The notes below the pieces were generated by a model that was not told the origin of the DNA, did not search any database, and worked only from the letters and a program-made list of their open reading frames with translations. 44,781 bases of DNA from Leucoraja ocellata (lineage: Eukaryota), in NCBI GenBank assembly GCA_036785375.1, contig JAWMAR010003537.1, forward strand, positions 1 through 44,781, written 5' to 3'. Both the position numbers and the translations under genes were made by a program. This document shows, piece by piece, positions 5,539 to 44,693 of the stretch (its first letter is position 1; each line of letters starts with the position of its first letter).

Positions 5539-6453
5539 TAATAATAATAATAATCTTTATTTATATAGCACTTTTCAACAAAACCAGTATTTGAACCAAA
5601 GTGCTTTACAGAGATTGATTAAATTAATTGAACAGATCAAATGTCAATAAATCCATACAAAACAAAAAAGAGAAAAAGAAAAAAAGACATAGAACAGTAC
5701 ACTATAGAAATCAACATGAAACGTCCCCCCACAGCAGAATTCACTGTGAGGGAAGGCACTAAAAATATCCAGTTCTCCCCTTCATAGTCCACCCGAGGTC
5801 GGGGCCTATATCTGGCCTCCTCAGCCAACCCGGTGTTTTCAGGCCCTCTGCCGCGAAGCTGGATCATCGGCGTCGGGTGAACATCCTTCAGCGGCTTGGA
5901 CTGAAGCGGCCGCTTCCTCCCCGAAGACTGCAATGACCAAAGTTCACAGGCCGTGCTGGCCGGACCTCCGACTCTGGCGATCTCGGATCCCAGGCTCAGC
6001 GGTGCTGTAAATCCAGTGCCGCCCACCCACAGCTGGACGTTCTGTAGCCGCAGCTCAACGATGTCGCAGTCGGCGGTCACAGTGCCCCGGAGCTTACCGC
6101 AAGGCGACCCAGTAAGGCATCGCCCGCTCCATGTTGGTGTCCCAGCATCTGCACCGCCGGCGAAGCTGTAGTCCCGGCAGGAAACGGCGCTCCAGCGCTG
6201 CTCCAGTTCGATGGTAGGCCGCACAGAGAGGACGAAGATGCGGTTCGGAGAAAAACCGCATCTCAGACCAGGTAGGACTGGGATTAAAATAGTTTCCCCC
6301 TTCCCCTTCCCTCACCCACCACATAAAAGAAGACCTCCAAGAAACATTTTGTACGGACAGGACTAAAAATAAAAATAAAAAAGTGTGAAAGGACGGACTG
6401 CAGGAGGAGCAGCCATACACAACGGCGCATCACCCCCGCAGTCCGCCATCTTT
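5539..6453 (-). mobile_element. GC-rich non-autonomous retroposon E1 with L2-type tail, nested in the Rex1 3' UTR
   Basis: 5' AAGATGGCGG, body homologous to E2, tail TGTAAAGCACTTTGG...GAAAAGTGCTATATAAATAAAG(ATT)n. No clear TSD. Confidence 0.75.
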
Positions 6454-6793
6454 ATAGTTTACTCGATACATGTGACAATTAACTAAACTAAATCCCATCT
6501 GCATCTTCTCCTGTACAATTTCATCTTTGCTATTATATACTAACAGGAAGCACTCCTCGACAATTTGAGCAATTTTCTGGCATTCCTTTGGCAAGGGAAG
6601 ACTGAAAACATTTAGTCAGAACCTCAGCTGTTCCCACCTGATAAGCAGTCATACAACACAGATTTCTGCGAGCACACACAGTGTGTATCGATCTTAAAAG
6701 CAAATATAAAGAATAAAAACTGTAAAAATAGACAAGATAAAAGTTGTGGGTATGTGTAAAGTGACAATGCATCAGGGTTAATTTGTCCATTGT

Positions 6794-9700
6794 TCATTGT
6801 TTATTTAAGCTGTTTATGGCAATGGGTATGAATGAGTTTTTGTGGATGTTTTTCTTGGATAGGGGGACTTTATATCGGCGGCCTGATGGCAGAAGTTGGA
6901 AAGACTTGTGCAGGGGGTGGGTGGGATCCTGTGTAATGAGATTGGCTTTCCTTTTAACTGCCTGGGTGTGGAGTACTGATCATTGATTTTGCGTTTTGCC
7001 AGTTATTTTGCTTGCCTGATTGATGATCCGGGAAAGCTTTGATTTGTCTTTGACAGAGGTGAGGGTGAACCAGGATGTGATGTTAAAGGTGAGTACAGAT
7101 TCTATAAGTGATTTATAGACAGCTGTTAAAACGTCCTGTCTGACATCAAAGCTCCTGAGTTTCCTCAGCAGGAACAGGCGTTGCTGTGCCTTCTTGTACA
7201 CAGAGTCTGTGTGCTGGGAGAAGGACAGGCGGGTGTCAATCTCTGTGCCCAGGTATCTAAAGGCCTCTACCTGCTCAACTGTCTGCCCATTTAGCCTCAG
7301 AGGTTCAAAGAGAGGTTGGGGGGAAGATGTTCGCCTCCCCCCACAACACAGCTCCTTGGTCTTGGAGATGTTAAGCTCCAGAGAGCTCTCTTTGATCCAC
7401 AGCATCAGGGTGTTGACCTGCTGATAGTAGGCAGCCAGAGAAGTGTGATCCTTGATGTGGGCCACCAGGGCCATATCGTCTGCATACTTAAAAAGGGAAA
7501 TGTCACTGTTATTGTTTGTTATGTTGTTTGTGTAGATGGAAAATAAAATCGGTGATAAGACACAACCCTGGGGGACACCAGTGTTTAAAATCATGTTCTT
7601 GGATTTAAAACCATTTACCACCACATGCTGAGGCCGGTCCTGCAGAAAGTCTTTTATCCACAGGATAAGTGATGGGTTGACTTGTAGATCCAGAAGTCGG
7701 TTACAGAGGGTGACCTTGTTAACTGTGTTAAAAGCTGAAGAAAAGTCCATAAATAAAATCCGTGTGTGGGGGTGTGGGGAGTCCAGCTGTCTGCTAACTG
7801 TGTCCAGAAGAGTCAAACAGGCATCCTCCACCCCACGCCTTGCCTTATAGGCAAACTGGAGTGGGTCAAGCCTGTCCACCACCATAGCAGTGAGGTGATC
7901 ACTTACCACCCTCTCCATACACTTGGAAAGAATGGATGTGAGTGCCACCGGTCTGTAGTCCTTCATCTCCGTGGCGTTAGATTTCTTCGGCACCGGTATG
8001 AGTGTGGACTCCTTCCACATCCATGGGACACAGCTGGAGTCAAGGAGATGCTGGAATAGCTGAGTGATAACATCACCCAGCTGAACTGAGCATTCCCTCA
8101 GCACCTTGCCCCTGAGCCTGTCCGGGCCAGAAGCTTTGTGAGGGTTGATGCGGCCCAGTATAGATGTAACCTTCATTTTATCCACTGTGATTGATGAATT
8201 GCTGGTGAGGGTCCAGTCATTCTGGGGGTGTGTCCTGTCAAACCTGCTGTAATAGATGTTGAGTTGCTCAGCAAAGGTGGCAGGGTCAGAGCATTGGATC
8301 AGGGCCGGTTTCTGGGCTCTGCCCATCATGATGTTAGGTCCCTGCCATGCCTCCCTTGCATTGCCAGTGGTGAATTTTTCCTCCACTTTGTTTTTTGTAG
8401 TGGAGTTTGGCCAGCCTGGTCTTCCTTCTCAGCTCACTATTATACTGTTTTACTCTGTGTTTGTCTCCCTGTAGGAATGCCACTTTTTTGTTGTTAAGAC
8501 ACTGCACCCAAGGCTTGTTATTAGGGTACAGCTTGACCTGTTTTGTTGGTATAACAGCATCCACACAGAATGACAAATAGGAGGAGATTAGAGTCGGTCA
8601 GCAGATTTAGGTCTCCCTCACAACTTTGGAAAAATATTTCCCAGTCAGTGATCTCCATGCAGCCCCTTAATGCATCGACAGAGTCATCGTTCCAGACTTG
8701 AATAGTTTTTGTTTGTATATCTGTTTTTAGTTTTTGTCTGTATTTTGGAAGCAGCAGAATGACATTATGGTCGGAACGACCGAGCGGTGGGCGGGGCTTT
8801 GAGACATAGGCTCCCGGTATGTTACCGAAACACAGATCCAGCGTTCTGTCAAGTCTGGTAGGTGTGGTGACATACTGCTCCAAGTTTGGAAGCTGTGTGG
8901 TGACATCGCATCTGTTAAAATCCCCGAGCAGGAAGACAGGCTGATCGCTGCTCTGATTGACAACTCTGTTGAAACAGTCAGCAATGCGCTCCGTTGCAAA
9001 TGCGTTATCAGGTCCAGGGACATACGCTAGGATAACTGTGATCTGTGTGAATTCACGGGGAAGGTAGTGAGGCCTGAACGACACCGTCATGATTTTGTGG
9101 TGTTTGCTGCATTCAGTCTCTCTGACAGTGAAGTTGACAGCCCACTCTGTGTTGACAGCCCACTCTATGTTGACAGCCCACTCTATGTTGACAGCCCACT
9201 GTGTGTTGCCAGCCCACTCTATGTTGCCAGCCCACTCTATGTTGACAGCCCACTCTATGTTGCCAGCCCACTCTATGTTGACAGCCCACTCTGTGTTGCC
9301 AGCCCACTCTGTGTTGCCAGCCCACTCTGTGTTGCCAGCCCACTCTATGTTGCCAGCCCACTCTGTGTTGCCAGCCCACTCTATGTTGCCAGCCCACTCT
9401 GTGTTGCCAGCCCACTCTATGTTGCCAGCCCACTCTGTGTTGCCAGCCCACTCTGTGTTGCCAGCCCACTCTGTGTTGCCAGCCCACTCTGTGTTGCCAG
9501 CCCACTCTGTGTTGCCAGCCCACTCTGTGTTGCCAGCCCACTCTGTGTTGCCAGCCCACTCTGTGTTGCCAGCCCACTCTGTGTTGCCAGCCCACTCTAT
9601 GTTGACAGCCATGCACAGCCCGCCCCCAATCGATTTCCGCGTCATCCTAGTGTCTCTGTCAAAACGGATGATCTTAAATCCATCAATATCGACATTGATT

Positions 9701-10137
9701 ATTTTTTCTGACAACCATGTCTCCGTGAAGCAAAAGAGACTTGTTTGATGGTAGTCTGAGTCAAGTTTGATGAGTGCGGAAAGTTCAGTTATTTTGTTGC
9801 GTAGTGACCATACATTGGAGAGAGTTATTGCAGGTAGTGGCAGCCTCCTACCTCGTCTCCTCATTCTGTTCCGTATTCCTCCTCTGGACCCCCTTCTCCT
9901 ACGAATGCTCTTGATGTAATGATTCCTCTGTAGCTGAGGAATCCCATTCAGGGAAGAAGGTGTCACTTGTAGAGCCAGGGAAGCAGGCCGCAGATCCAGC
10001 AAAGTGTCCCGTGAGTAGGTGAGCCTCCCTCCATGGCGTGTCATGGGATTTGCCGGTGTAGTACATATCGCAAATACTGGTTCCAGAAAGGCGGTCAGAA
10101 CACACACACTCGCTAAATACTTCACCGTGGTGGTCAT
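6794..10137 (-). pseudogene. Rex1-type EN-RT polyprotein with two frameshifts (about 8576 and about 8390) and one in-frame stop (6980)
   Basis: YSRDTLLDLR...RRRRGSRGG...LPAITLSNVWSLRNK; FTETWL; LGDFN; LGRSDH; DYRPVALTS; DPLQFAY; FMDFSSAFNT; GVPQGCVLSP; KYADD; past the stop, DPTHPLHKSFQLLPSGRRY...NSFIP. Confidence 0.9.
9133..9610. repeat. 18-bp minisatellite GTTG(C/A)CAGCCCACTCT(G/A)T, about 26.5 copies, in frame inside the Rex1 endonuclease
   Basis: Directly visible tandem array encoding A(G/V)N(T/I)EW hexapeptides. Confidence 0.98.
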
Positions 10138-10257
10138 ACTTGCTGTCGTTAAATACCACACTTAATGACTCTCAGAAAAACACTAAACAACTCAGAAAAC
10201 ATGCAAACATACGGGAGCAGCGCGCCGCGGTTCGCTCACAGAATAGCGCCCCGCCCA

Positions 10258-12056
10258 CAAGCCCAGTCGACCCATTCTTTCATCATATGTCAGTCACGCC
10301 ATCCTGGGATTAACATTGTAAACCTACCTGCACCCCCTCAATAACAAGAATGTTCTTCCACAAATTAGGAGACCAAAACTGCACACAATACTCCAGGTGT
10401 GGTCTCACCACAGCCCTGTACAACTGCAGTAGGACCTCCTTGCTCCTAATCTCAAATCCTCTCGCAATGAAGGCCAACATGCCATTAGCTTTCTTCACTG
10501 CCTGCTGTACCTGCATGCATACTTTCAGTGACTGATGTACAAGCACACTCGGGTCTCGTTGCATCTCCCCTTTTCCTAATCTGACACCATTCAGATAATA
10601 ATCTGCCTTCGTGATCTTGACACCAAAGTGTATAACCTCATATTTATCCACATTATACTGCATCTGCTATGCAGCTGCCCAATCACCCAACGTATCCAAG
10701 TCACCCTACAGGCTCATAGCATCCTCCTCTCAGTTCACTCTGTCACCTATCTTTGTCAATAGACAATAGGTGCAGGAGTAGGCCATTCGGCCCTTTGAGC
10801 ATGATCATGGTTCTGGTTCTGGTCTCCCCCAACATCGGGAACATGTTTCCTGCCTCTAGCGTGTCCAAGCTCTTAACAATCTTATATGTTTCAATGAGAT
10901 CCCCTCTCATCCTTCTAAACTCCAGAGTGTACAAGCCCAGCTGCTACATTCTCTCAGCATATGACGGTCCCGCCATCCCAGGAATTAACCTTGTAAACTT
11001 ACGCTGCACTCCCTCAATAGCAAGAATGGCCTTCCTCAAACTAGGGGACCAAAACTGCACACAATACTCCAGGTGTGGTCTCACTAAGGCTCTGTATAAC
11101 TGCAGAAGGACCTCTTTGCTCCTATATTCGATTCCCCTTGTTATAAAGACCATCATGCCATTCGCTTTCTTCACTGCCTGCTGTACCTGCATGCTTACTT
11201 TCATAGACTGATGTACAAGGACCCCTTTTCCCAACTTGACGCCATTTAGATAGTAATCAGCCTTCCTGTTTTTGCTACCAAAGTGCATAACCTCACATTT
11301 ATCTGCCTTAAACTTCATCTGCCATGCACCTGCCCACTCCCCCAACCTGTCCAAGTCACCCTGCATTCTCATAGCATCCTCCTCACAGTTCACACTGCCA
11401 CCCAGCTTTTTGTCATCTGCAAATTTGCTAATGTTACATTTAATTCCCATCGTCTAATTCGTTAGGGAAGTCCAGGACAAGGGGTCACAACTTAAGGATA
11501 AGGGGGAAATCCTTTAAAACCGAGATGAGAAGAACTTTTTTCACACAGAGAGTGGTGAATCTCTGGAACTCTCCGCCACAGAGGGTAGTTGAGGCCAGTT
11601 CATTGGCTATATTTAAGAGGGAGTTAGATGTGGCCCTTGTGGCTAAGGGGATCAGGGGGTATGGAGAGAAGGCAGGTACGGGATACTGAGTTGGATGATC
11701 AGCCATGATCATATTAAATGGCGGTGCAGGCTCGAAGGGCCGAATGGCCTACTCCTGCACATAATTTCTATGTTTCTATGTTTAATATATATTGTAAGTA
11801 ACTGGGGTCCCAGCACTGTGCCTTGCGACAACCCACAACTCCCTCCCTGCCATTCTGAAAAGGACCCGTTAATTCCAACTCTTTGCTTTCTGTCAATTCT
11901 CTATCCGTGTCAATACCCTACCACCAATACCATGTGCTCTAATTCTGCACACTAATCTCTTGCGTAGGGCCTTTTTGAAGGTCCAGATACACTACATCCA
12001 CTGGTCTCCCTTATTCATTCTACGTTACATCCTCAAAAGATTCCAGAAGATTAGTC
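10258..12056 (-). mobile_element. Tandem minus-strand CR1 RT/3' fragments with a plus-strand CR1 3' end nested at about 11461-11780
   Basis: ORFs 10310-10663 and 10944-11450 ([19 protein letters not shown]); nested piece ends in TTTCTATG. Confidence 0.85.
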
Positions 12057-12271: not shown

Positions 12272-15200
12272 CTTGACAATAAGTACTCCTGTTTGAGTAC
12301 TGTTGGGGGGGACAGCCTAGCTGGGGGTAGCAACAGCGGCCGGGCCTCTAGTACAGAGACCGGCCCTGTTGCTCAGAAGGGTAAGGAAAAGAAGAGGAGG
12401 GCAGTAGTAATAGGGGACTCTATAGTTAGGGGGTCAGACAGACGATTCTGTGGACGCAGTCTGGAGACCAGGATGGTAGTTTGCCTCCCTGGTGCCAGGG
12501 TCTGAGATGTATCTGAACGTGTCCAAGAAATCCTGAAATGGGAGGGAGAGGAGCCTGAGGTCGTGGTACATATAGGTACCAATGACATGGGTAGAAAAAG
12601 AGAAGAGGTCCTGAAAGGAGAATTTAGGGAGTTAGGAGGAGAGTTAAGGAGAAGGACTGCAAAGGTAACAATCTCAGGATTACTGCTTGTGCCACGCGAC
12701 AGTGAGAGTAGGAATTGAGCGAAGTGGAGGATAAATGCGTGGCTGAACGACTGGTGCAGAGGGCAGGGATTCAAGTTTCTGGATCATTGGGACCTCTTTT
12801 GTGGAAGGTGTGACATGTACAAAAAGGATGGGTTGCACTTGAACCCGAGGGGAACCAAAATATGGTGGGGAGATTTGCAAAGGCTACTGGGGAGACTTTA
12901 AACATGGAATGGTTGGGGGGAGTGACTCAAATAGAGAAAGCCACTCAGACCCAACATGTAGGGGGGAAAGAAGAAAACAATAATAAACAGAGAATAAGAG
13001 GTGGTGGGTTTCTTAAATGTGTGAGCAGAGAGACAGAGGGGTGTAAAATGAGGGTAGAAGCAATAGGTAGCAAGGTGAAAAGTAAAAGTGGCAGGCAGAC
13101 AAAACCAGGGCAAAAATCAAAAAGGGCAACTTTTCAACATAATTGTACAAGTTGGTAAGAGCGTTGTAAAAACAAGCCTGAAGGCTTTGTGTCTCAATGC
13201 AAGGAGCATTCGTAATAAGTTGGATGAGTTGAATGTGCCAATAGCTATTAATGATTATGATATAGTTGGGATCACGGAGACATGGCTCCAGGGTGACCAA
13301 GGCTAGGAGCTGAACATCCAGGAATATTCAATATTCAGGAGGGATAGACAGAATGGAAAAGGAGGTGGGGTAGCGTTGCTGATTAGAGAGGGGATTAATG
13401 CAATGGAAAGGAAGGGCATTAGTTTGGAGGATGTGGAATCGATATGGGTAGAGCTGCGAAACACTAAGGGGCAGAAAATGCTAGTGGGTGATGTGTACAG
13501 GCCACCTAACAGTAGTAGTGGAGTTGGGGATGGTATCAAACAGGAAATTAGAAATGCGTGCGACAAAGGTAAAACAGTTATAATGGGTGACTTCAATCTA
13601 CATATAGATTGGGTGAATCAAATTGGCCGGGGTGCTGAGGAAGAGGATTTCTTGCAATGTTTGTGGGATAGTTTTCTAAACCAACACGTAGAGGAACCAA
13701 CGAGAGAGCAGGCTATTCTAGACTGGGTATTGAGTAATGAGGAAGGGTTAGTTAGCAGTCTTGTTGTACGTGCCCCCTTGGGCAAGAGTGACCATAATAT
13801 GGTTGAGTTCTTCATTGGGATGGAGGTGACATTGTTAATTCAGAAACAAGGGTTCTGAACTTAAGGAAAGGTAACTTTGAGGATATGAGACGTGAATTGG
13901 CCAAGATTGACTGGAAATTGATTCTTAAAGGGTTGACGGTGGATATGCTATGGAAGGCATTTAAAGTCTGCATGGATGAACTACAACAATTGTTCATCCC
14001 AGTTTGGCAAAAGAATAAATCAGGGAAGGTAGTGCATCCGTGGATAACAAGGGAAATCAGGGATAGTATCAAAACAAAAGATGATGCGTACAAATTAGCC
14101 AGAAAAAGCAGCCTACCAGAGGACTGGGAGAAATTCGGAGACCAGCAGAGGAGGACAAAGGGCTTAATTAGGAAAGGAAAAATAGATTATGAAAGAAAAC
14201 TGGCAGGGAACATAAAAACTGACTGCAAATGTTTTTATAGGTACGTGAAGAGAAAGAGATTAGTTAAAATAAATGTAGGTCCCTTGCAGTCAGCAACAGG
14301 TGAATTGATCATGGGGAACAAGGACATGGCAGACCAATTGAATAACTACTTTGGTTCCGTCTTCACAAGGAAGACATAAATAATCTACCGGGGGCCAAAT
14401 GAGACGGAGGAAATCCAGGTTAGTCGGGAAGTGGTGTTAGGTAAATTGAATGGATTAAAGGCCGATAAATCCACAGGGCCGGATAGGCTGCATCCCAGAG
14501 TACTTAAGGTAGTAGCCCCAGAAATAGTGGATGCATTAGTGATAATTTTTCAAAACTCTTTAGATTCTGGAGTAGTTCCTGAGGATTGGAGGGTAGCTAT
14601 TGTATTGTATTGTATTCAAATTTATTGTCATTGTCTCAATTTGAGACAACGAAATGAATTTCCCTTACAGGCAGTATCATAAAAAAAAATTATAAATAAA
14701 TAATAAATAAATAATAAAACATATTAAAAATAAAATTGAAATTGAATTTAAAAAAAAGCACAAACACAGAAAGTCCACGACACAACATAACATAAATGGC
14801 ACCCAGGTGAGGAAGGCACCATAGTCCAGCCAGCCTCCCCTCCGTGTTCATCCGTGTTCATCCGTGGTCGGGGCCTTCCGAGCACCCGCAGTCGCCGCCC
14901 CGGGTGGCCCGATGTTCAGGCCCTCACGCCGGGCTGGTGGAACGCCGACGCCGAACCCCGACGGTGAGCATCCTCCTCCTCAGCGGCCCGGACCTCCCGA
15001 TCAGCCGCCTCCCGCTGCCGGAGTCTGCAGCTCCTGAGTCCACAGGCCAAGCCGGGCAGAGTCACAGGACCCCGCGCTGTCCATCAGCGCCGCCCACGTT
15101 GGGAGCTCCGCAAACCGCAGCTCCAGGATGTCGGTGCAGCAGGTCCAGCACTCCGGGCTCCAGACGGCGACCCCCGGTAAGGCATCGCCAGCCCGCAATG

Positions 15201-16960
15201 TTCCAGCGCTGTCCCGCCGCTGCTGGAGCTCCGGTCGATCCCGACAGGAAAGGCCGCGCCAATCCAGGTAGGTAGGCCGCTGTTGGGGGAGGGGGGGGCG
15301 AGGACACGACTCAAATAATAGTCGCGTCCTCACCAGGAAGCGGCTGAAGGACGGTATCCCCCGCACCGTGCCCTCTTCCCCCACGTAAAAACACCAAAAA
15401 AACACACAAAAACACACTTTTACATAACTAAATAAACAAAAAAACAAAAAGATACCGGGCTGTAGGTGGAGGCTGCTGGCACCAGCGCCACCGGAAGTAC
15501 AACACATGCTAATGTAACCCACTTTTTAAAAAGGAGGGAGAGAGAAAATGGGGAATTACAGACCAGTTAGTCTAACAACGGTAGTGGGGAAACTGCTAGA
15601 GTCAGTTATTAAAGATGGGATAGCAGCACATTTGGAAAGTGGTGAAATCATTGGACAAAGTCAGCATGGATTTATGAAAGCTAAATCATGTCTGACGAAT
15701 CTTATAGAATTTTTCGAGGATGTAACTAGTAGCGTCGATAGGGGAGAACCAGTGGATGTGGTGTATCTGGACTTCCAGAAGGCTTTCAACAAGGTCCCAC
15801 ATAAGAGATTAGTATGCAAACTTAAAGCACACGGTATTGGGGGTTCAGTATTGATGTGGATAGAGAACTGGCTGGCAAACAGGAAGAAAAAAGCAGAAGT
15901 AAACGGGTCCTTTTCAGAATGGCAGGCAGTGACTAGTGGGGTACCGCAAGGCTCAGTGCTGGGACCCCAGCTATTTACAATATATATTAATGATTTGGAC
16001 GAGGGAATTGAATGCAACATCACCAAGTTTGCGGATGACACGAAGCTGGGGAGGGGGGCAGTGTTAGTTGTGAGAAGGATGCTAGGAGGCTGCAAGGTGA
16101 CTTGGATAGGCTGGGTGAGTGGGCAAATGCATGGCAGATGCAGTACAATGTGGATAAATGTGAGGTTATCCACTTTGATGGCAACAACAAGAAAGTAGAC
16201 TATGATCTAAATGGTGGCCGATTGGGAAAAGGGGAGATGCAACGAGACCTGGGTGTCATGGTACACCAGTCATTGAAAATAGGCATGCAGGTGCAGCAGG
16301 CAGTGAAGAAAGCGAATGGTATGTTAGCATTCATAGCAAAAGGATTTGAGTATAGGAGCAGGGAGGTTCTACTGCAGTTGTACAGGGTCTTGGTGAGACC
16401 ACACCTGGAGTATTATGTACAGTTTTGGTCTCCAAATCTGAGGAAAGACATTCTTGCCATAGAGGGAGTACAGAGAAGGTTCACCAGACTGATTCCTGGG
16501 ATGTCAGGACTTTCATATGAAGAAAGACTGGATAGACTCGGTTTGTACTTGCTAGAATTTAGAAGATTGAAGGGGTTCTTATAGAAACTTACAAAATTCT
16601 TAAGGGGTTGGACAGGCTAGATGCAGGAAGATTGTTCCCGATGTTGGGGAAGTCCAGGACAAAGGATCATAGTTTAAGGGTAAAGGGGAAATCCTTTAGG
16701 ACCGAGATGAGAAAAACGTTTTTCACACCGACAGGGGTGAATTTCTGGTATTCTCCGCCACAGAATGTAGTTGAGGCCAGTTCATTGGCTATATTTAAGA
16801 GGGAGTTAGATGTGGCCCTTGTGACTAAAGGGATCAGAGGGTATGGAGAGAAGTCAGGTACAGGATACTGAGTTGGATGATCAGCCATGATCATATTGAA
16901 TGGCGGTGCAGGCTCGAAGGGTCGAATGGCCTACTCCTGCACCTATTTTCTATGTTTCTA
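12272..16960 (+). mobile_element. Near-complete, 5'-truncated CR1 LINE (ORF1 SGNH esterase plus ORF2 EN-RT), frameshifted
   Basis: VVIGDSIVRG, HIGTND, DGLHLN (GDSL/SGNH); ITETWL, MGDFN, GKSDH; [23 protein letters not shown]; tail TTTCTATG; TSD/microhomology TGAC at 12268-12271 and 16961-16964. Confidence 0.95.
14600..15507 (-). mobile_element. GC-rich non-autonomous retroposon E2 with Rex1-type tail, inserted in CR1 ORF2
   Basis: TSD GCTA (14596-14599 and 15508-15511); 5' ACTTCCGGTGGCG; tail CATTTCGTTGTCTCAAATTGAGACAATGACAATAAA...(AATAC)n. Confidence 0.85.
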
Positions 16961-17037
16961 TGACTCCAGCAGATATACCGACAATGCTTAGCTGTGATTA
17001 AATGGTTCCATTCTATAGGTGCAAAGAAATTGACTTT

Positions 17038-21003: not shown

Positions 21004-24000
21004 TTTTACTTCGGAATCACGTGAGTGACTACGTGAAGACCCCGCCAGCACGCATGCGCGGCATATCGTCTATCGCATTGCACAACGACTGGCTGGCAGG
21101 CGCGATTCTCCTGCCAGCAGTCAGACCTGAAGGTAAGTTTTTGAAACATTTTCCAGGTTTTATCTTCCTGCAGGAACCTCTGCTTAAAGGTCCTGCTAAA
21201 GCCCGGAGCGTTGCCCCCGCAGCAGAAGGTTTAAAACAGGACCTGCGGGAAAATTCTTTACTCTCAGGTTGTTTAGTTCTATTTCTGTGAGGATGTGTTA
21301 CAGGAAAGGTACCATGGACTAAGTCCAAATGGAGACTGACTGTGGAGGACCATGGGAGTGCGGGTAGTCAGCAGCGGTTGGCTACACCTGGACCGCTAAT
21401 CGATCATCATTCTCCGACCTGGCACCTGCACAGCACGTATGGACATCACAGACTGGCGGGAAGTCCAAGCAGAAGTCGGACAGACCGAAGGGAGTCGGGC
21501 TGTGAAGACTGTGATCACATATCCCGCATGGAGCGGTTGATGGAGCAGATGCTCCAACGTGACATGCTCCAGTATATGGAGTTTAGTCACCATGGGGTCC
21601 TAGGACGCCCATGGCCGCACCTCATAGAGGGCTGCATAATGCATCTCCCTCGACAGAGGGGAGCATTAGGAGACACTTCTGGGCTGACTCTGAAGACAGG
21701 GGTTTGGCTGAAGATACCACAAGTGTGCTGCGGGTGCAGGAACAACAACCAGCAGCAAGGCTGTGAATGACATCTCCGGTGGCAGCACCCCTATGCACTC
21801 ACCAGCAAACCATGGAAACTGGTGAAAGCTTGAAGGCCGTACAACCAGGACAAAGGTCTTTTCAGGCCATAGCCCAGAACGGCCTTCCTGGAAGATGCGC
21901 CAACCCCGTACTCGAAGCTTCTCTTCCTCCCAGGAGCAGAATTTGCAAAATGATGCACACGAGGTTAAGACTGACTGAAGTCACTGACGGAAGTCAGGAC
22001 AAGATACAAGATACAATTTATTTGTCATTTGGACCCCTTAAGGTCCAAACGAAATGACGTTTCTGCAGCCATACATTACAAACAAATAGACCCAAGACAC
22101 AACATAATTTACATAAACATCCATCACATGGCTGTGATGGAAGGCCAAAAAAACTTATCTCTCCACTGCACTCCCCCCCCCCCCCCCCGATGTCAGAGTC
22201 AAAGTCAAAGCCCCCGGCTGGCGATGGCGATTGTCCCGCGCCCATTAAAGCCACGCCGGGTGGTGCAAGGTCGCACACCGGGTTCTTTATGTTAGAGCCC
22301 CCGGCGTGAGCTCGCAGAGTCCCGCGGCCATTCCAAGCCGCGCGGGGCGGTGCTGTAAGGCCCCGCTCCAGGAACTCTTCGACCCCGCAACTCGGGCGGG
22401 AGAAGTCGCCGTTGCGGGAGCCCTGAAAAGCGGTCTCCCTCCAGGGACCCGCGGGCTCCCGGTGCCGCCGTCCGCCAGACCCGCAGTTGCAGCCTCCGAA
22501 TCTCCGGAGGTCGGGCCGCAGCAGCAGCAGCGCTCCACCACCGCTCCACCCGCTCTGGACTCGGCCAGCTCCGCAACGGTGAGGTGAGTCGTCGGCACCA
22601 GAGCCCCAGGTCTTCCTGTTGGAGGCCGCTCCATGTTACAGCCCCAACGACAACGGAGACCCGACAAAGAAAAGGTCAGGTCTCCCGTGCAGGGAGAGAT
22701 TTAAAAGTTACCCCCTCCCATCCCACCCCAACCCCCCCACACACATACCTCAACAAAAAATAACAAAAACTACATAAAAACATAGACAAAAAATAATAAA
22801 AACGCAGATGGGCTGCAGAGGCCGCTGCTGACGAGAGTCGCGCCGCCTACCGTGTCAGGAGGGTCCCCTCCGGCATGGGTTCGGCCTCGGATGTTTTACC
22901 CATCCTGATTGGCCAGGGAGGGCCATATCAGCGCAGGTCTCCTCGAGAGCCTGTGGCCACACCCTTTTCAGGGTTGCCTACAAAACTCCCTTCTGCGAAG
23001 GTGAGTACGAGGGGTCAGTTGGCAACTGACTCTGAACTCGGAAGCACTCTGAACTCTGAACTCGGGAGCATGTCCGAGGAACAGGTGCCGGCTGGGAGAT
23101 ACCATGCACCTGAAAAGACATGGGTCCACATGCACCAGCAGCCCTACGCTCCAATCAAGGATGGAAATCGAACCCGCATCGGGGGCCTTTTGGGTTTACC
23201 ATAAAACCCCCGGTAGCCATGACGGCAGGTGGGTCTGGGTTTTTCCTAAAACGTAGTGTTGTGGACCATTTACATGAAGGTTGGATGTGATTAGTTTATA
23301 CTGCACAGTACAAGCGAGACAGTCTCGGAATATGGCTGGAGTTGCCTCTTTAGGCAGGTTCGCTATAATGACAGATGAGGCCTGTTCATTATCAACAAGC
23401 TCAACTCGCATGTGCAGTATAGACATTGAAACTTCGTGACTATTAATTCCCATGGGGTCAGCTTCATTCACAGGGCACCGGAAATACCTGAAATTTAACT
23501 GGATGGGGCAATGATATAGCAAAATAGGGAAACCAGCTCCCAGGTTATTTATTAAATTAATGCTTCGGCAGCTCAGAGCTAAACAATATTGTTAAGAACT
23601 ATCTGGATGAAATTTAAACGCTGTATTTTGCTAAGTTAGCTGTATCAGCCACAAAACCATTTGAGAAATTGGGTTCTCATCTGTCCAGATAAATTTAAGT
23701 TGATGCCAACTGAAATTATTGATTATTGGGATTACCTTTAACTCTATTAATCATCTGGGACTCCGCCCTGAGGTAAGGGATTGGAATTAATTGAAGCCCG
23801 TAACAAACCTGATCAAACAGCCTTCTGTTCATCAAGTATAATTGGCTTACAGCTGTGCTATTTGGGCCTTTGCACAATCAAAACAATACAGCATGCAAAA
23901 GAAGTAAGCACTCAAGTACCATGTGGTCATTGTTACCAGCTCTATGCTACTCCACTAAATCAGCAAATCTTCAGTTAAATTACAAACTGATGCTATTGTT

Positions 24001-33975: not shown

Positions 33976-34432
33976 GGCGGGACTGTCATGTGTTAAAAGA
34001 ATGGAGTGACTGGGCTTGTATACTCTGGAATTTAGAAGGATGAGAGGGCATCTTATTAAAACATATAAGATTATTAAGGGATTGGACATGCTAAAGACAG
34101 GAAACATGTTCCCGATGTTGGGGGAGTCTAGAACCAGGGGGCACATATTAAGAATAAGGGGTAGGCCATTTAGAACGGAGACGAGGAAAAACCTTTTCAC
34201 CCAGAGAGTTGTGAATTTGTGAAATTTTCTACCTCATAAGTCAGTGGAGGCAAATTTTCTGGATGCTTTCAAGAAAGAGTTAGATAGAGCTCTTAAAGAT
34301 AGCGGAGTCAGGGGATATGGGGAGAAGGCAGGAACGGAGTACTGATTGGGGATGATCAGCCATAATCACATTGAATGGCGGTGCTGGCTCGAAGGGCCGA
34401 ATGGCCTAGTCCTGCACCTATTGTCTATTGTC
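33976..34432 (+). mobile_element. CR1 3' fragment, ATTGTCT tail
   Basis: ORF 34016-34222; CTATTGTCTATTGTC end. Confidence 0.88.
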
Positions 34433-34559
34433 AATCGAGAAACATTGCAGAAAGATGCTATCCCATCATTCAGGGTCGCTTCGCTCTTCCATAAGATCAC
34501 AGCGGATGCCGTCTAAGAATCCTCATCACCTTTCCTCTCATTCTCCGTACTCCTTGATG

Positions 34560-35399
34560 TGGGCGGCGGGACCGGTGTCGCAGCGGCCTCTGCAGTCTGT
34601 CCGTGTTTTTTTTGTTTTTTTTTTGTCCTGTTGAGGGTTTAGTTGTAGCGGTTTAGCGTTTTTTTTTTTTTTTTTTTTAAATGTGTATGTGTGGGGGGTG
34701 GGGGATGGGTGGGGAAACTTTTAATCTCTTCCCTGCATGGAGACCCGACCTTTTCCCTGTCGGGTCTCCGTTGCCATTGGGGCCTAGCGCCGTGGAGCGG
34801 CCTCCACCGGAACGACCTGGAGGCTCAAGTCACGGCGCCTGTGGAGCCGCGGAGCTGCTGTGGAGCTGTTGTGGAGCTGCTGTGGAGCCGCGGAGCCTGT
34901 GGAGCTGTGGAGCTGTTGTGGAGCTGCTGTGGAGCTGCTGCGGACTTACCTCCGTGGAGCTGGCCGGCTTCGGGGCGTGGAGAGCGGCGGTGGCGCGTTG
35001 CTGCGGCCCGGCTCCGGTGGATGGTGACACCGGGAGCTCGCGGATCCCCGGTGGGAGGCTGCTTTGCGGGGCACCGGCAGTTGCAGCGGCGACTTCTCCC
35101 GCCCGAATTGCGGGGTTGAGAGTGACCTGGAGCCCTACAACGCCCGGCGCGGCCTTAATTTGCCGCGGACTAGCGCCCGCCGGGGGCTTTGACCTCGACT
35201 TCGGGAGGGAAATGGAATGCAGGGGAGAGACAAGAACTTTGCCTTCCATCACAGTGAGGAGGAGAGCCACTGTGATGGATGGTTATGTGAATAATGTTGG
35301 TGTGTGTTTTGGTTCTTTTATTGTATGGCTGCAGAAACTACATTTCGTTTGAACCTCGTGTGAGGTTCAAATGACAAATAAAGGTATTGTATTGTATTG
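34560..35399 (+). mobile_element. GC-rich non-autonomous retroposon E4 with Rex1-type tail
   Basis: Close relative of E3; internal (GTGGAGCTGCT)n-like array at about 34840-34940; tail CATTTCGTTTGAACCTCGTGTGAGGTTCAAATGACAAATAAAG(GTATT)n. Confidence 0.85.
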
Positions 35400-39299: not shown

Positions 39300-39980
39300 T
39301 ATCGTCGGTTTTATTATTTTTGTGTGTTTTGAAAGTTTGTGCTAATGTTCTCTGGTTTGTTTTATGTGGGGGGTGAGGGATGGGGTCAGGGGAAAGTTTT
39401 TTTCAATCTCTTACCTTGCCGGAGATGCGATTGTTTTCCGGATCATATCTCCGGTCGCTCTGCGGCCTAACATCATGGAGCTGGCGGCCATGCACGGGAC
39501 TAACTTTGTGCCCCACCACGGGGCCGTGGACTTACCATCGCAGCCGATCCCTTGCCTTGGATCGACGCTCCAACCGCAGCCTGCGGACTTTAACATCAAA
39601 GAGCTCACAGTCTCGGGAGAGACCGAGTCGGTAAGCTCCAACGACACAGAAGGTTTAACCAGCCCCAACCTGGGGGTCAGATTGCCTGGCATGGGGAGCT
39701 GAGATCCCCTGATACAGGAGATTGATCACCCTGATGCGGAGGGACCACCGCCGGCTACAGGAGTCTAGATCAACGGAAGCTCGAGGCCCAGAACCATGGG
39801 AGATCAAAGAAAGGAAGAGGTTGAACAATTTTTGCCTTCCAACACAGTGAGGAATGTGGAGGAGTCACTGTGGTGGATGTTCATGTTCTAATGTATTTTG
39901 TGTGTTCTATTGCTTTTTATTGGTATGACTGTACGGCAAAACAAATTCCTCGTGTGTTGCAAAACATACTTGGCTAATAA
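39300..39980 (+). mobile_element. GC-rich non-autonomous retroposon E5 (5' end eroded)
   Basis: T-tract, G-tract, hairpin 39419-39454, 3' box GCCTTCCAACACAGTGA...TCACTGTGGTGGA, tail AAATTCCTCGTGTGTTGCAAAACATACTTGGCTAATAAAG. Confidence 0.75.
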
Positions 39981-40132
39981 AGTATGAATATGATGATGAT
40001 ATCGTGAGATTAAATAAACAACATGATATAAACAGGTAAAATGCATGTTGCCTCTGATTGTGGTGAATACAGAAAATAGGCTAAAAATATATACACAGGT
40101 GCAGAGATTTATTGAATGTTGGCTGTAACGCA

Positions 40133-40713: not shown

Positions 40714-41006
40714 CTAGACCAAGTGCAGACCCGTTGGGTCTGTTCCCCCCAACGTGCGGTTGTGGGGGGGGGGAGGCGGCATGCAGCGTCACACACACTA
40801 ACTACCCCCCCCCCCACACTTACGCTAATTACCCCCCTTGATATTATATTAATATTATTAATTTGCTCCTTTTACCCCATAACCACCCTATCTACTGACG
40901 CATAGCCCCCAACTTGCAGTCACATCTAGAGAGGGGGGATGGGGGGGTGGTGTAGAGAGTGTGGGCAGAGGAGCGGAGGGGAAGAGGAGAGGGGGTGAAC
41001 TGTGTG
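40714..41006 (-). mobile_element. Helitron-like non-autonomous 3' end
   Basis: Minus strand CAGACCC-AAC-GGGTCTG hairpin (40726-40742), then CACTTGGT, then CTAG followed by T. 5' end not identified. Confidence 0.6.
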
Positions 41007-41680: not shown

Positions 41681-42476
41681 CTCAGGAACCTTAAGAATGC
41701 AATGTTTGTAGCGAACATTAAGCCCACTGACCTGCCTGTCCTGATCCATATCCTTGTACTCTCTGCACTTCCCTGTACCTACAATGAGCCTCATAAACAC
41801 CACTATCATATCCACCCACACCACCATCATGTGTTCCTGGTCCGTACCTTCCATGTAAAATACTTGCCTCGCCCATCTGCATTCAACGTTCTCCCTCACA
41901 CCTTATAGCTACGTCTTCTCGTGTTGGACATTTCCATCCTTGAAAATGATACTAAATATCTACCGTTTCAATGACTCTCATCATTGTATATACGTCTATC
42001 AAGTCCCCCACGAACCTCCGACATTCCAGAGAAAGCAATCCACAGATATCCAATCTCTCCCTGTGGCTGATCCAGGCAGCATTCTGGTTATTCTGGTTAA
42101 GAGGATGATAGGAGGCTGCAATGTGGCTTGGATAGGCTGGGTTAGTGGGCAAATGCATGGCAGATGCAGTATAATTCTGGTTAACCTGTTTTGTATCCTC
42201 TCCAAAACCTCAATTTCTTCCCTTTAATGGGGCGATCGGATCTGTACTCAATACTCCAATTACTGCCTCATCAAAGTCATATAGAACTGCATCATGTTCC
42301 TGACCCTTATGCTCAACACCCCTAGCAATGAACGCAAGTATACCATACATCCACTTTACCATCTACATGTGCTGCCAACTGCAGCAAGCTATGAACTTGG
42401 ACTCCAAGATCCCTCAGCACATCCATGTCCTTCAGAATCTAGCAATTTACTGTATAAAACAGCCTATCATTGATGA

Positions 42477-44693
42477 TCATTGAATGGTGGCTGAACTCCA
42501 AAATGCGTTCATCCCCGGCTGGAGAAAGAAACAATATGGGGAAGGCGGCTCAACGTGACTAACGAGGGAAATCAAGGATAGTGTTATTGTATTGTATTGT
42601 ATTGTATTCAAATTTATTGTCAATTTGAGACAACAAAATGAATTTCCCTTACAGGCAGTATCATTAAAAAAATCACAAAAAATAAAATAAATAATAAATA
42701 AATAATAAAACATATTAAAAATAAAATTGAAATTGAATTTAAAAAAAGCTCAAACACAGAACATAACATAAATGGCACCAAGGTGAGGATGGCACCATAA
42801 TCCAGCCAGCCAGGGAAGAGGTTATATAAATTGGCCAGAGGACTGGGAGAAATTTAGAATTCAACATGGTAGGAAATAAGGGTTAATTAAGAGCGGGAAA
42901 AGAGAGCATGAAAGAACGCTTGCGGGGAATATAAAAACTGACTGCAATAGCTTCTTTAGATATGTAAAAAGGAAAAGATCAGTGAAGAAAACTTAGGTCA
43001 CTTACAATCAGAGACAGGTGAATTTCTAATGGAAAGCAAGGAAATGGCAGATCAGTTAAACGAGTAATTTGGTTCAGTATTTACCAAGAAAGACACAAAC
43101 AATCTCCCAGAAATACGAGGGGACCGAGGATTTAGTGGGAGGGAGGAACTGAAGGGAACCCACATTAGTCAGGAAATGGTGTTATGCAAACTGTTGGGGC
43201 TGAAGACAAATAAATCCCCAGGGCCTGTTGGTCTGCATCCCAGAGTACTCAAGCAGGTGGCTCTCGAAATCGTGAATGCATTGGTGATAATTTTCCAATA
43301 TTCTCCCGACTGGATCCGTTCCTGTAGACTGAAGTGCAGCCGTTGTAACTCCACTTTTTAAGAAAGGAGGGAGAGAGAAAACGGTGAATTATAGACCAGT
43401 TAGCCTGACATCGGTCGTGGGGAAGATGCTGGAGTCGATTATTAAAGATGTTATAGCAGCGCATTTGGAAAACAGTGACAGGATTGGTCAAAGTCTGCAT
43501 GGCTTTATGAAGGGAAATCATGCTTGACTAATCTTCTGGAATTTTTTGAGGAAGCAACAAGTAGAATGGATAAGGGAGAGCCAGTAGATGTGGTGTATCT
43601 GGACTTTCAAAAAACCTTTGACAAGGTCCCACACAAGAGATTAGTGTGCATAATTAGATCACATGGTAATGGGGGAAGGGTATTGACATGGATAGAGAAC
43701 TGGTTGTCAGACAGGAAGCAAAGAGTAGGCATAACTGGTCCTTTTCAGAATGCCAGGCAGTGACAAATGATGTGCGGCAAGGCTCGGGGCTAGGACCCCA
43801 GTTATTTACAATATTTATTAACGATTTAGACGAGGGAATTAAATGTGTCATTTCCAAGTTAAATTTACGGATGACGCAAAGCTGGGTGGCAGTGGGAGCT
43901 GCGATGAGGATGCTATAAAGCTGCAAGGTGACTTAAAATAAGGCAGATGCATGCAGTATAATGTGGATACATGTGAGGTTACCCATTTTGGTGGCAAGAA
44001 CAGGAAGGCAGTTTATTATCTGAATGGTGTCAGATTTGGAAAAGGGGAGGTGCAACAAGACCTGGTATGCTTGTACATCAGTCCTGAAAGTGAGCATGCA
44101 GGTACGGCAGGCAGTGAAGAAATCTAATGGCATGTTGGCCTTCATTGCGAGAGGATTTGAGTTTTGGAGCAAGGAGGTCCTACTGGCAGTTGTACAGGGC
44201 CCAGGTGAGACCACACCTGGAGTATTGTGTGCAATTTTGGTCTCCAAATTTCAGGAAGGACATTATTGCTATTGAGGGAGTGCAAAGTAGGTTCACCAGG
44301 TTAATTCCCGGGATGGCGGGACTGAGGGGCTAGATGCAGGAAACATTTTCCCGACGTTGGGGGAGTCCAGAACCAGAGGTCACGGTGTAAGAATAAGGGA
44401 TAGGCCATGTAGGACTGAGATGAGGATAAAAAAATTCACCCAGGGACTTGTGAATCTGCAGAATTATCTGCCACAGAAGGCAGCAGAGCCAATTCTCTGG
44501 ATCTTTTCAAGAGAGAGTTAGATTTAGCTCTTAGGACAAATGGAAACAAGGGATATGGGGAAAAAGCACGTACGGGGTACTGAATTTAGATGATCAACCA
44601 TGATTATGTTGAATGGTGGTTCCTGTTCGGAGGGCCGAATGGCCTACTCCTGCACATATTTTTCCATGTTTCTATGTTTCCTCTATGTTTCTA
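42477..44693 (+). mobile_element. Degraded CR1 ORF2 plus 3' end
   Basis: [42 protein letters not shown] tail; many frameshifts. Confidence 0.9.
42587..42812 (-). mobile_element. 5'-truncated copy (E6) of the E2 subfamily, inserted in CR1 ORF2
   Basis: Very similar to 14600-14833, including the (AATAC)n tail. Confidence 0.9.

What the first reader, a model, noticed from the sequence alone, without database searches (positions are those of the whole stretch)
5539..42812. Family of long, GC-rich, non-tRNA retroposons with one architecture and interchangeable LINE tails (E1-E6)
Seen: six inserts (5539-6453 -, 14600-15507 -, 22000-22853 -, 34560-35399 +, 39300-39980 +, 42587-42812 -). The longer copies share one order: short GC leader, T-tract, G-tract, hairpin, GC-rich body, GCCTTCCnTCAC box, T-rich spacer, tail. 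E1 and E2 have clearly homologous bodies (GCGGCCTACC, GGCGATGCCTTACnGGG, GAGGGCCTGAA, AGGCCCCGACC) but unrelated tails. E1 ends TGTAAAGCACTTTG...AAAAGTGCTATATAAATAAA(ATT)n; E2-E4 end CATTTCG-hairpin-TGACAA(A)TAAA-microsatellite. TSDs (E2, E3) and 5' truncation (E6) fit target-primed reverse transcription. Established: SINEs borrow the 3' tails of partner LINEs. The first tail form is what I recognise from L2-clade elements, and the second resembles the 3' end of the Rex1 in this window. Inference: a structured non-coding parasite, with no tRNA, 5S or 7SL head that I can see, that has switched between L2 and Rex1 machinery. I do not recognise it as a described family but cannot check.
Basis: partly seen in the sequence, partly recalled or inferred. 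Interest (0 to 1): 0.85.

Follow-up and report, generated by a model that had tools for sequence, protein, structure and literature searches.

The report
Headless GC-rich retroposons with swapped tails
Six copies of a non-coding jumping element about 0.9 kb long carry a CpG-island-like body, three conserved RNA hairpins and 3' ends of the kind LINE elements use, so they look like parasites of LINE machinery built differently from classical SINEs.

Summary
Six inserts (about 10% of the window) form one diverged family. It has target-site duplications, 5' truncation and microsatellite-ended tails. None has a tRNA, 5S, 7SL, snRNA or ribozyme match, a Pol III B box or protein-level conservation. 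T runs from about position 50 argue against a full-length Pol III transcript.

New here:
- The bodies are the window's CpG-island-like segments.
- An 11-bp head hairpin covaries in 6 of 11 pairs.
- Head, body, box and tail are shuffled between copies, not only tails.
- Paralogous empty-site contigs show E1 entered with its L2-like tail as one 1,103-bp unit, 184 bp longer at the 5' end than reported.
- Thousands of related contigs exist in two DNA runs.

Not supported: the in-window LINE's tail or 5' UTR resembling the E elements. The L2 and Rex1 labels are untested.

Best reading: an SVA-like, probably Pol II-transcribed, LINE-dependent retroposon superfamily with module exchange. Repbase and Dfam could not be searched. 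This scan noted the same family on at least ten other windows of this genome.

The parts
5542..6453 (-). E1 proper: leader, T tract, G tract, hairpin 1, GC body, box/hairpin 2, T-rich spacer, L2-like tail, (ATT)n
   Evidence: Other copies' similarity stops at 6452/6453 (records 6 and 24).
6454..6637 (-). 184-bp AT-rich 5' extension that entered together with E1 (5' transduction or template-switch chimera). It is itself repeated in the genome.
   Evidence: empty-site joint 5534->6638 skips 1103; contigs over 6481-6597 with depth 539 and 1254 in X1.
5535..5541 (-). 3' copy of the 7-bp TSD TTATCAG of the E1 unit (5' copy at 6638-6644)
   Evidence: (7 letters fit both sides of the joint)
14600..15507 (-). 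E2, full length (908 bp), inserted antisense in a CR1-type LINE copy. TSD TAGC.
22000..22853 (-). E3, full length (854 bp). TSD TCCTGAC (22854-22860 and 21993-21999).
34557..35399 (+). E4, full length (843 bp). TSD CCTTG. Contains an 11-bp x 9.3 tandem array at 34851-34944.
39306..39998 (+). E5, 5'-truncated inside the T tract (693 bp). TSD ATATCGT. Third tail variant ending in a (GAT)-type repeat.
42587..42812 (-). E6, 5'-truncated copy of the E2 subfamily (box to tail), inserted in a second CR1 copy
6234..6265 (-). Hairpin 1 of E1. Equivalents: E2 15300-15331(-), E3 22655-22685(-), E4 34739-34769(+), E5 39421-39452(+).
   Evidence: 11-bp stem, 53 of 55 cells paired, 6 of 11 pairs compensatory
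34693..34714 (+). G-quadruplex-type G tract of E4. Equivalents: E1 6296-6317(-), E3 22711-22738(-), E5 39368-39392(+). E2 has a G-rich tract that misses the strict motif.
   Evidence: 4 of the 11 G4 motifs in the window are E heads on the sense strand
35241..35283 (+). Box plus hairpin 2 of E4; the GCCTTCCNTCAC box is its 5' arm. Equivalents: E1 5721-5757(-), E3 22120-22141(-), E5 39838-39877(+). Absent in E2 and E6.
22025..22052 (-). Terminal tail stem-loop of E3 (12 bp), followed by AAATGACAAATAAA and (TTGTATC)n. Equivalents: E2 14628-14652(-), E4 35345-35374(+).
5562..5610 (-). L2-like tail fold of E1 (GTAAAGCACTTT ... AAAGTGCTATAT), followed by AAATAAA and (ATT)n
   Evidence: z=-3.47
5445..10254 (-). 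Context: host LINE (EN, RT and ALKBH8_N-type domains, one broken ORF, about 115-nt 5' UTR, (TGAATC)n end). The E1 unit sits in its 3' UTR. About 3.7 kb without the insert.
   Evidence: Ends were placed by eye against the CR1 copy it sits in.

Best explanation
E1-E6 belong to a high-copy superfamily of non-coding, non-autonomous retroposons of about 0.85-0.9 kb. They are copied by target-primed reverse transcription using the enzymes of stringent-type LINEs.

Inferred steps:
- A full-length RNA starts at a fixed 5' end, the short GC leader.
- It is made by Pol II or as part of longer host transcripts, not by Pol III.
- It ends in a LINE-type tail: a stem-loop, an AATAAA-like block and a short tandem repeat. 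That tail is what the partner LINE's reverse transcriptase binds and primes on.
- Subfamilies arise by exchange of whole modules (head, body, box, tail), so related bodies end in unrelated tails and can use different LINE partners.

The body is a CpG-island-like sequence. The head carries a G-quadruplex-type tract and an 11-bp hairpin kept by compensatory changes, which points to a second RNA-level requirement besides the tail (stability, export, packaging or processing). In design it is closest to primate SVA. In tail logic it is closest to SINEs of stringent LINEs.

Shown here: family membership, insertion signatures, lack of coding and of small-RNA heads, CpG and G4 features, hairpin covariation, mosaicism, and high copy number.

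Inferred: the polymerase, the role of each hairpin, and the partner LINEs.
For: - Family: pairwise similarities; profile searches recover the left-out copies and nothing else.
- Retroposition: 7-bp TSD and paralogous empty-site contigs for the E1 unit in X2 and X1, plus RNA reads in X24; paralogous empty site for E2; TSDs of 4-7 bp for E3-E5; 5' truncation of E5 and E6.
- 3' bias: summed depth falls from 305,000-392,000 at the box to 40,000-90,000 at the head in X2.
- Fixed 5' end: E2, E3 and E4 start within about 20 alignment columns of each other. Other copies of the E1 type stop matching at 6452/6453.
- Copy number: 8,014 (X2) and 7,423 (X1) contigs laid at 80% or more on the 1.4-kb stretch, flanking repeats included.
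- No Pol III head: 0 tRNAs; 0 Rfam matches at gathering score; at E<=10 only three far-sub-threshold chance matches (two sRNA models and MIR408) touch an E element; 0 of 3 B-box-like sites fall in an E element.
- T runs of 4-20 start at positions 49-72 of all 4 full-length copies. By established knowledge these terminate Pol III.
- Non-coding.
- CpG: bodies have GC 0.58-0.71 and CpG o/e 0.69-0.89, against 0.43 for the rest of the window. All CpG-island-like 300-bp windows lie on the five E bodies, apart from one 300-bp segment spanning E3's 5' end and its upstream flank.
- Hairpin 1: 96.4% of cells paired against at most 51% when slid; 0 of 500 shuffles reach it.
- Tail stem-loops of 11-13 bp in E2, E3 and E4, with z of -2.95 to -3.87.
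- Mosaic similarity matrix.
- Published mechanism: stringent LINE RTs need and bind a specific 3' stem-loop (PMC4176376, passages). SINE module exchange and tail switching are established (PMC5499810, passages).
Against: - No partner LINE with either tail form was found in the window. The only non-CR1 LINE here shows no significant tail or 5' UTR similarity.
- Transcription by Pol II is inferred only from the T runs and CpG-island character. The oligo-dT RNA run shows low, strand-symmetric coverage that follows DNA copy number, and no preferred start (tables 2 and 6). There is therefore no evidence of an own promoter.
- The 184-bp 5' extension on E1 shows that at least one source transcript, or a template switch, went beyond the canonical 5' end.
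- Hairpin covariation rests on 5 sequences. A DNA-level palindrome cannot be excluded.
- Contig bridging from the E1 body to the L2-like tail was seen in only one listed contig. The tool skipped the low-complexity spacer 5657-5695.
Confidence: 0.68

Rival explanations
1. The elements are ORF-less derivatives of autonomous CR1-group LINEs, as in SIDE or HAL-type decay. The head and CpG-rich body would be a LINE 5' UTR with its internal promoter, and the box-to-tail region a LINE 3' UTR. Different subfamilies would descend from different LINE lineages rather than from tail swapping.
For: - LINE 5' UTRs are often CpG-rich internal promoters (my own knowledge).
- The 5' ends are fixed.
- The in-window LINE begins with GTGGGCGG, as E4 does. 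It also has a GC leader of about 45 nt followed by a T-rich stretch, the same order as the E heads.
- L1 UTR replacement is known (PMC5753468, passage).
Against: - No LINE in the window shares sequence with any E module. Heads against the LINE 5' UTR give z<=1.5, with 48-329 of 500 shuffles as good. Tails give z<=1.6. The nhmmer profiles have no hit there at E<=10.
- Related heads sit on unrelated bodies, and related bodies on unrelated tails. This is easier to explain by exchange among non-autonomous elements.
- No remnant of EN or RT coding sequence.
Confidence: 0.2
2. The family is real but already catalogued, for example as an unclassified or 'N' (non-autonomous) non-LTR entry for skates or sharks in Repbase or Dfam. 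Nothing is then new beyond this description.
For: The elements are abundant and easy for automated repeat finders to pick up. This scan's own readers noticed them on at least ten other windows.
Against: Four full-text searches returned no paper describing such a family. The vertebrate CR1-group survey contains no occurrence of 'non-autonomous' (PMC13343379, term search). This is weak evidence: repeat libraries and supplements were not searchable.
Confidence: 0.35
3. The E1 L2-like tail is a rare accident: a single source copy that read through into a neighbouring L2-tailed repeat (3' transduction). It would not be a successful tail switch used by a subfamily.
For: - Only one copy with this tail is in the window.
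- Only one listed contig links body and tail elsewhere.
- E1 also carries a 5' extension, so its source transcript was unusual.
Against: - Summed depth over the tail (446,000-564,000 in X2) is close to that over the E1 box region (305,000-392,000). Depth over the E1-specific spacer is 99,000-137,000 even with part of it skipped. This fits many copies with the same box-spacer-tail order.
- Another first-reader note on a different window reports the same body with two tail types (s1-946160, unchecked).
Confidence: 0.2
4. It is a true Pol III SINE whose head derives from an unrecognised small RNA.
For: The 45-70-nt GC leader is followed by T runs, the layout of a small Pol III gene with its terminator.
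Against: - No tRNA, 5S, 7SL or snRNA match even at E<=10.
- No B box. A-box-like sites are at the chance level, and the only one inside an E element lies about 230 nt in, after the T runs.
- The T runs would stop Pol III after about 50-70 nt, long before the tail needed for retroposition.
- The length of 843-912 bp is beyond the SINE range.
Confidence: 0.03

Closest known systems
SVA / LAVA composite retrotransposons of hominoids
   Same: Both are non-coding and non-autonomous, with no Pol III head, and both are mobilised by a LINE in trans. Both have a GC-rich body: SVA is termed a 'mobile CpG island'. Both carry a G-quadruplex-prone 5' repeat tract and a variable tandem-repeat region (E4 has an 11-bp x 9.3 array). 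Both show 5' transduction: the MAST2 exon in SVA_F1, and the 184-bp extension on E1. The SVA facts come from PMC6928650 and PMC5753468 (passages).
   Different: SVA is about 2 kb and is assembled from recognisable Alu and HERV-K pieces. It ends in poly(A) and uses the relaxed L1 machinery. The E elements are about 0.9 kb, and none of their parts matches another repeat in the window. They end in a specific stem-loop plus microsatellite, as templates of stringent CR1-group or L2-type LINEs do, and they keep covarying hairpins.
SINEs of stringent LINEs with module exchange (CORE-, Deu- and V-SINEs; SacSINE1 and CmiSINE in cartilaginous fish; UnaSINE1/UnaL2 in eel)
   Same: Both carry a LINE-derived 3' tail with a stem-loop and a short tandem repeat, and both make TSDs. 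Tails are swapped between families to change the LINE partner. Source: PMC5499810 and PMC4176376 (passages).
   Different: SINEs are 80-600 bp with a tRNA-, 5S-, 7SL- or snRNA-derived Pol III head. The E elements have none and contain Pol III terminators near their 5' end.
SIDEs and other internally deleted LINE derivatives (R2 and R2/R1 hybrid SIDEs, HAL1, RIME, NARTc). These names are recalled, except HAL1, which is in PMC5753468.
   Same: Both are ORF-less or ORF-poor elements that keep LINE ends and use the parent's enzymes. Hybrids with ends from two LINEs are known (recalled).
   Different: A parent LINE with matching 5' and 3' ends is required, and none was found here.

Membership tests
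SINE (SINEBase sense) | 5' head derived from tRNA, 5S, 7SL or snRNA, with an internal Pol III promoter | tested here: not met
   ARAGORN found 0 genes. Rfam gave 0 matches at gathering score, and at E<=10 only far-sub-threshold chance matches (two sRNA models, MIR408) touch an E element. 0 of 3 B-box-like sites fall in an E element; A-box-like sites are at chance level.
SINE (SINEBase sense) | Short length (about 80-600 bp) and no Pol III terminator before the tail | tested here: not met
   Full-length copies are 843-912 bp. T runs of 4-20 start at positions 49-72 in 4 of 4 full-length copies.
SINE (SINEBase sense) | LINE-type or A-rich tail, TSDs, dispersed multicopy | tested here: met
SVA-like composite retrotransposon | Non-coding, GC/CpG-rich, with a tandem-repeat (VNTR) region and a repeat tract at the 5' end | tested here: inconclusive
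   The CpG-island character is met. A G-rich tract is present in 5 of 5 heads and a strict G4 motif in 4 of 5. A clear tandem array is present only in E4; E2 has a 10-bp x 2.6 repeat.
SVA-like composite retrotransposon | Built from pieces of other known repeats; poly(A) end; L1-dependent | tested here: not met
   No E module matches any other repeat in the window. The ends are microsatellites after a stem-loop, not poly(A).
Internally deleted LINE derivative (SIDE-like) | 5' and 3' ends homologous to one autonomous LINE | tested here: inconclusive
   Not met against the only candidate in the window. The true partner LINEs are not in the window, so the test is open.
Rex1-tailed retroposon | Last 60-80 nt homologous to the 3' end of an autonomous Rex1 | tested here: inconclusive
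   Against the in-window LINE, z<=1.6 in 10 comparisons. That LINE was not classified to clade here. It has a single ORF and a short 5' UTR, which fits the statement that Rex1 lacks ORF1 (PMC13343379, passage).
L2-tailed retroposon | Tail homologous to an L2-clade LINE of the same genome | not testable with these tools
   There is no L2 reference in the window (the motif occurs only in E1) and no repeat library. The L2 label rests on my recall of L2-type tails.

The most novel reading that the evidence does not exclude
Cartilaginous-fish genomes carry an SVA analogue that arose independently. It is a Pol II-type, structured, non-coding RNA parasite that has no small-RNA head. It needs a conserved 5' hairpin and G4 module as well as a 3' stem-loop. 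It hops between at least two LINE clades by swapping tails, and it has sown thousands of CpG-island-like sequences across the genome, where they could act as promoters, methylation boundaries or G4 sites.
Probability: 0.3. Interest if true: 0.7.

Novelty: new variant of a known kind. Interest (0 to 1): 0.5.

Why it matters
If the reading holds, three things follow.

1. Stringent LINEs, which demand a specific 3' stem-loop, can be parasitised by long Pol II-type RNAs as well as by Pol III SINEs. The covarying 5' hairpin suggests a requirement beyond the tail, and this can be tested in a retrotransposition assay.

2. The elements spread CpG-island-like, G4-bearing DNA. In this window every CpG-island-like 300-bp window lies on one of them, apart from one 300-bp segment spanning E3's 5' end and its upstream flank. 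They will therefore confuse CpG-island, promoter and gene calls, since they contain ORFs of up to 223 aa. They may also have been a source of regulatory sequence.

3. The mosaic copies give a clean system for studying module exchange and partner switching among non-autonomous retroposons.

Tried and rejected
- Small-RNA or ribozyme head: Rfam at gathering score and at E<=10, and ARAGORN, found nothing credible in any E element. It gives no sign of the HDV-like head reported for another retroposon of this genome.
- Pol III boxes: none.
- Coding capacity: tblastx similarity is frame- and strand-independent. In 7 ORFs of 126-223 aa no Pfam family reached E<0.1; one chance-level hit had E=0.38.
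- Homology of E tails to the in-window LINE tail: not above shuffles.
- Homology of E heads to that LINE's 5' UTR: not above shuffles. The shared GTGGGCGG start of E4 and the LINE remains an anecdote.
- Further copies in the window: none beyond the six.
- Literature: four searches gave no description of the family. The only hit for a typed motif was an unrelated primer.
- RNA evidence: the oligo-dT run gave low coverage on both strands and no preferred starts. This says nothing about an own promoter.
- Not done: clade assignment of the in-window LINE. I chose not to spend a large protein search on it, because its tail does not match the E tails anyway.
- Not possible: Repbase or Dfam comparison, genome-wide consensus, and a second read laying on E3 or E4 (cap reached).
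- Supplements of the papers were not opened. Those of PMC13343379 and PMC5499810 may hold LINE and SINE consensus tails that bear on the L2 and Rex1 labels.

Full report
**What is there.**

The window is 45% GC and full of non-LTR retrotransposon debris. It holds several CR1-type copies, with RT and EN domains found. Their ends resemble, by my recall only, elasmobranch CR1 tails.

- E3~E4: 66% over 652 columns plus 72.5% over 222.
- E2~E6: 84% over 243.
- E1~E5: 74% over 124 in the head.
- E4~E5: 77% over 102 around the box, and 69% over 117 in the head.
- E1~E2: 73% over 82 in the body.

A profile built from the heads of E1-E4 finds the head of E5 (not used to build it) at E=1.1e-13. A profile of E1-E5 finds E6 at E=2.2e-4. 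Neither finds anything else in the window at E<1. The family is therefore real, strongly diverged, and present exactly six times, covering about 10% of the window.

**Boundaries and mode of insertion.**

For E1 the public contigs gave an empty site. Contigs of two DNA runs and reads of one RNA run join 5534 directly to 6638, with 7 letters fitting both sides. These come from other copies of the LINE that hosts E1.

What entered that LINE's 3' UTR is therefore 5535-6637 (1,103 bp including one copy of the TSD TTATCAG). Other genomic copies of the E1 type stop matching at 6452/6453 (records 6 and 24). So 6453 is the canonical 5' end, and 6454-6637 is an extra piece that was co-inserted. That piece is itself repeated: contigs of depth 539 and 1254 cover 6481-6597 in X1.

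For E2, an uninterrupted paralogous CR1 copy at 43344-43347 marks the empty site, with TSD TAGC. E6 sits in that second CR1 copy, about 500 bp away from the equivalent site, so the two are independent insertions.

E3 (TCCTGAC), E4 (CCTTG) and E5 (ATATCGT) have TSDs readable in the sequence. E5 lacks the leader and part of the T tract. E6 keeps only box to tail.

Every copy ends in a short tandem repeat directly against the TSD. Variable TSDs, 5' truncation and microsatellite ends are the signature of target-primed reverse transcription (established knowledge).

**Abundance.**

On the 1.4-kb stretch around E1, 8,014 (X2) and 7,423 (X1) contigs were laid at 80% likeness or more, flanking repeats included. 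Summed depth in X2 across E1:
- L2-like tail: 446,000-564,000.
- Box region: 305,000-392,000.
- Head: 40,000-91,000.
- LINE flank at 6475-6615: 3,900-8,900.

Single diverged contigs have depths of roughly 5-40. This suggests copies in the thousands, which is a rough inference of mine and not a count. The fall towards the 5' end fits 5' truncation.

This scan's first readers noted what looks like the same family on at least ten other windows of this genome. I treat these as unchecked leads that agree.

**What it is not.**

- ARAGORN finds no tRNA.
- Rfam finds nothing at gathering score.
- At E<=10, the only hits touching an E element are far-sub-threshold chance matches at E1's ends and in E2's tail (psRNA6, MIR408, STnc150). 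There is no 5S, 7SL, U1, HDV-like or hammerhead signal.
- None of the 3 B-box-like sites in the window lies in an E element. A-box-like sites are at chance level.
- In all four full-length copies, T runs of 4 to 20 begin 49-72 nt from the 5' end. By established knowledge Pol III would terminate there and never reach the tail.
- tblastx similarities between copies occur in every frame and on both strands.
- In seven ORFs of 126-223 aa inside the elements, no Pfam family reached E<0.1; one chance-level hit had E=0.38.

**Anatomy that is conserved.**

1. A GC leader of about 45-70 nt. E2, E3 and E4 begin within about 20 alignment columns of each other, so the 5' end is defined rather than random.

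2. A T-rich tract followed by a G tract. The G tract meets the four-run G-quadruplex motif in 4 of 5 heads, and these are 4 of the 11 such motifs in the window.

3. Hairpin 1, an 11-bp stem with a T-rich loop. On the five-copy alignment, 53 of 55 cells pair, against at most 51% when the partner is slid. Six of 11 pairs show changes on both sides. 0 of 500 shuffles reach the observed pairing or covariation score. With five sequences this is suggestive and not final.

4. A GC-rich body (GC 0.58-0.71) with CpG observed/expected of 0.69-0.89, against 0.43 for the rest of the window. Scanning 300-bp windows for GC>=0.55 and o/e>=0.65 returns only the five E bodies plus 22801-23100, which spans the 5' end of E3 and its upstream flank.

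5. The GCCTTCCNTCAC box is the 5' arm of hairpin 2. It folds well in E1, E3 and E4 (z -2.9 to -5.3). E5 also folds into the stem, but its energy is not distinguishable from shuffles (z -1.2). It is absent in E2 and E6.

6. A T-rich spacer.

7. The tail. E2, E3 and E4 end in an 11-13-bp stem-loop whose base (CGTT(T)G / CAA(A)TG) is kept while the top and the loop differ. This is followed by AATGACAA(A)TAAA and a 5-7-mer repeat. E5 has a weaker variant. E1 has a different fold, the GTAAAGCACTTT...AAAGTGCTATAT form, followed by (ATT)n.

**Mosaicism.**

I scored each module pair by local alignment against dinucleotide shuffles.
- Heads: E1~E5 z=25, E4~E5 z=16, E1~E4 z=10, E3~E4 z=34. E2 is undetectable.
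- Bodies: E1~E2 z=19, E3~E4 z=37. E5 matches none.
- Box region: E4~E5 z=14, E1~E4 z=8.
- Tails: E3~E4 z=27, E2~E4 z=5. E1 matches none.

So E1 shares its head with E5 and E4, its body with E2, and its tail with no other copy. Modules, not only tails, have been recombined.

**The tails and their partners.**

It is not met. A single TSD brackets the whole unit with (ATT)n at its end, so body and L2-like tail were reverse-transcribed together. One further contig links an E1-like body to that tail (joint 5614->5790). Tail and box depths are similar, which fits many such copies. The tool skipped the low-complexity spacer 5657-5695, so direct bridging could not be counted.

That LINE is about 3.7 kb without E1, with one broken ORF carrying EN, RT and an ALKBH8_N-type domain, a 5' UTR of about 115 nt and a (TGAATC)n end. 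Ten comparisons gave z<=1.6. Its 5' UTR is not detectably related to the E heads, although it starts with the same 8 letters as E4 and has the same GC-then-T-rich order.

I did not classify that LINE. A single ORF fits the published statement that Rex1 lacks ORF1 (PMC13343379, passage), but this is not a test. The L2 label for the E1 tail is my recall.

**How it most likely works.**

Published work shows that stringent LINEs retrotranspose only RNAs carrying their own 3' stem-loop. The loop gives specificity, and the stem can be exchanged if pairing is kept (PMC4176376, passages). SINEs escape the silencing of a partner by swapping tails (PMC5499810, passages).

The E tails have exactly this form: a kept stem base and covarying stem tops. 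Their loops differ (E3 UAAG, E4 GUGU, E2 AUU), which may mean different partner subfamilies.

I therefore read the E elements as trans-mobilised templates of stringent LINEs. They are transcribed by Pol II from their own CpG-rich 5' part or as passengers of host transcripts. A head module (G tract plus hairpin 1) is kept by selection for an RNA-level role that I cannot name.

The RNA run neither supports nor refutes an own promoter.

**Comparison with known elements.**

In design the closest known element is primate SVA. It is non-coding, has no Pol III head and is LINE-dependent. It is called a mobile CpG island, has a G4-prone 5' repeat and a VNTR, and shows 5' transduction (PMC6928650 and PMC5753468, passages). 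In tail logic the closest are SINEs of stringent LINEs.

The E elements fail the defining SINE features of head, length and absence of terminators. They also fail the SVA features of poly(A), L1 dependence and recognisable source repeats. A deletion-derivative origin from a LINE stays open, because the partner LINEs are not in the window.

**Verdict.**

I rate it a new variant of a known kind, a LINE-dependent non-autonomous retroposon. It is moderately interesting for three reasons: the headless, CpG-island-like design; the covarying 5' hairpin; and the module shuffling. There is a real chance that repeat libraries already hold it under an uninformative name.

Noticed in passing
window 9133-9610 (- strand ORF 8521-10161): An 18-bp unit repeated 26.6 times, 95% matching, lies in frame inside the LINE's endonuclease-side ORF. 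It encodes a (T/I)EWAGN hexapeptide array between two parts of the EN region.
   Followed up: partly
window 6454-6637: A 184-bp AT-rich piece entered together with E1, joined exactly at E1's canonical 5' end. It is itself multicopy in the genome (contigs of depth 539 and 1254). Its origin is unknown: 5' transduction or a template-switch chimera.
   Followed up: partly
window 10249-10262 and 34558-34570: The host LINE and E4 both start with GTGGGCGG, followed by a GC leader and then a T-rich stretch. Alignment statistics do not support homology.
   Followed up: yes
window 22854-23100: The flank just upstream of E3 is itself GC-rich (0.60) with CpG o/e 0.66 and contains a CCAAT-like motif. No Pfam domain was found in the nearby ORFs 20519-20971 and 21342-21770.
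   Followed up: partly
window 6170-6278: Another first-reader note proposes a U1 snRNA-derived module here. Rfam gives no U1 or other snRNA match in the window, even at E<=10.
   Followed up: yes
window, e.g. 16816-16962, 28578-28748, 31652-31822, 11612-11782, 34256-34435: About 15 copies of a 150-180-bp CR1-tail-type repeat ending in a (TTCTATG)-like motif. Several are 94-95% alike, so they are the youngest-looking repeat in the window.
   Followed up: no
window 22173-22188 and 746-772: Long homopolymer runs: G16 on the E3 sense strand just before its box, and C27 at 746-772.
   Followed up: no
one search run list: Runs labelled with two different coded organism names (A and B) hold this exact locus at similar word shares (0.49-0.55). 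The labels may be synonyms or very close relatives.
   Followed up: no
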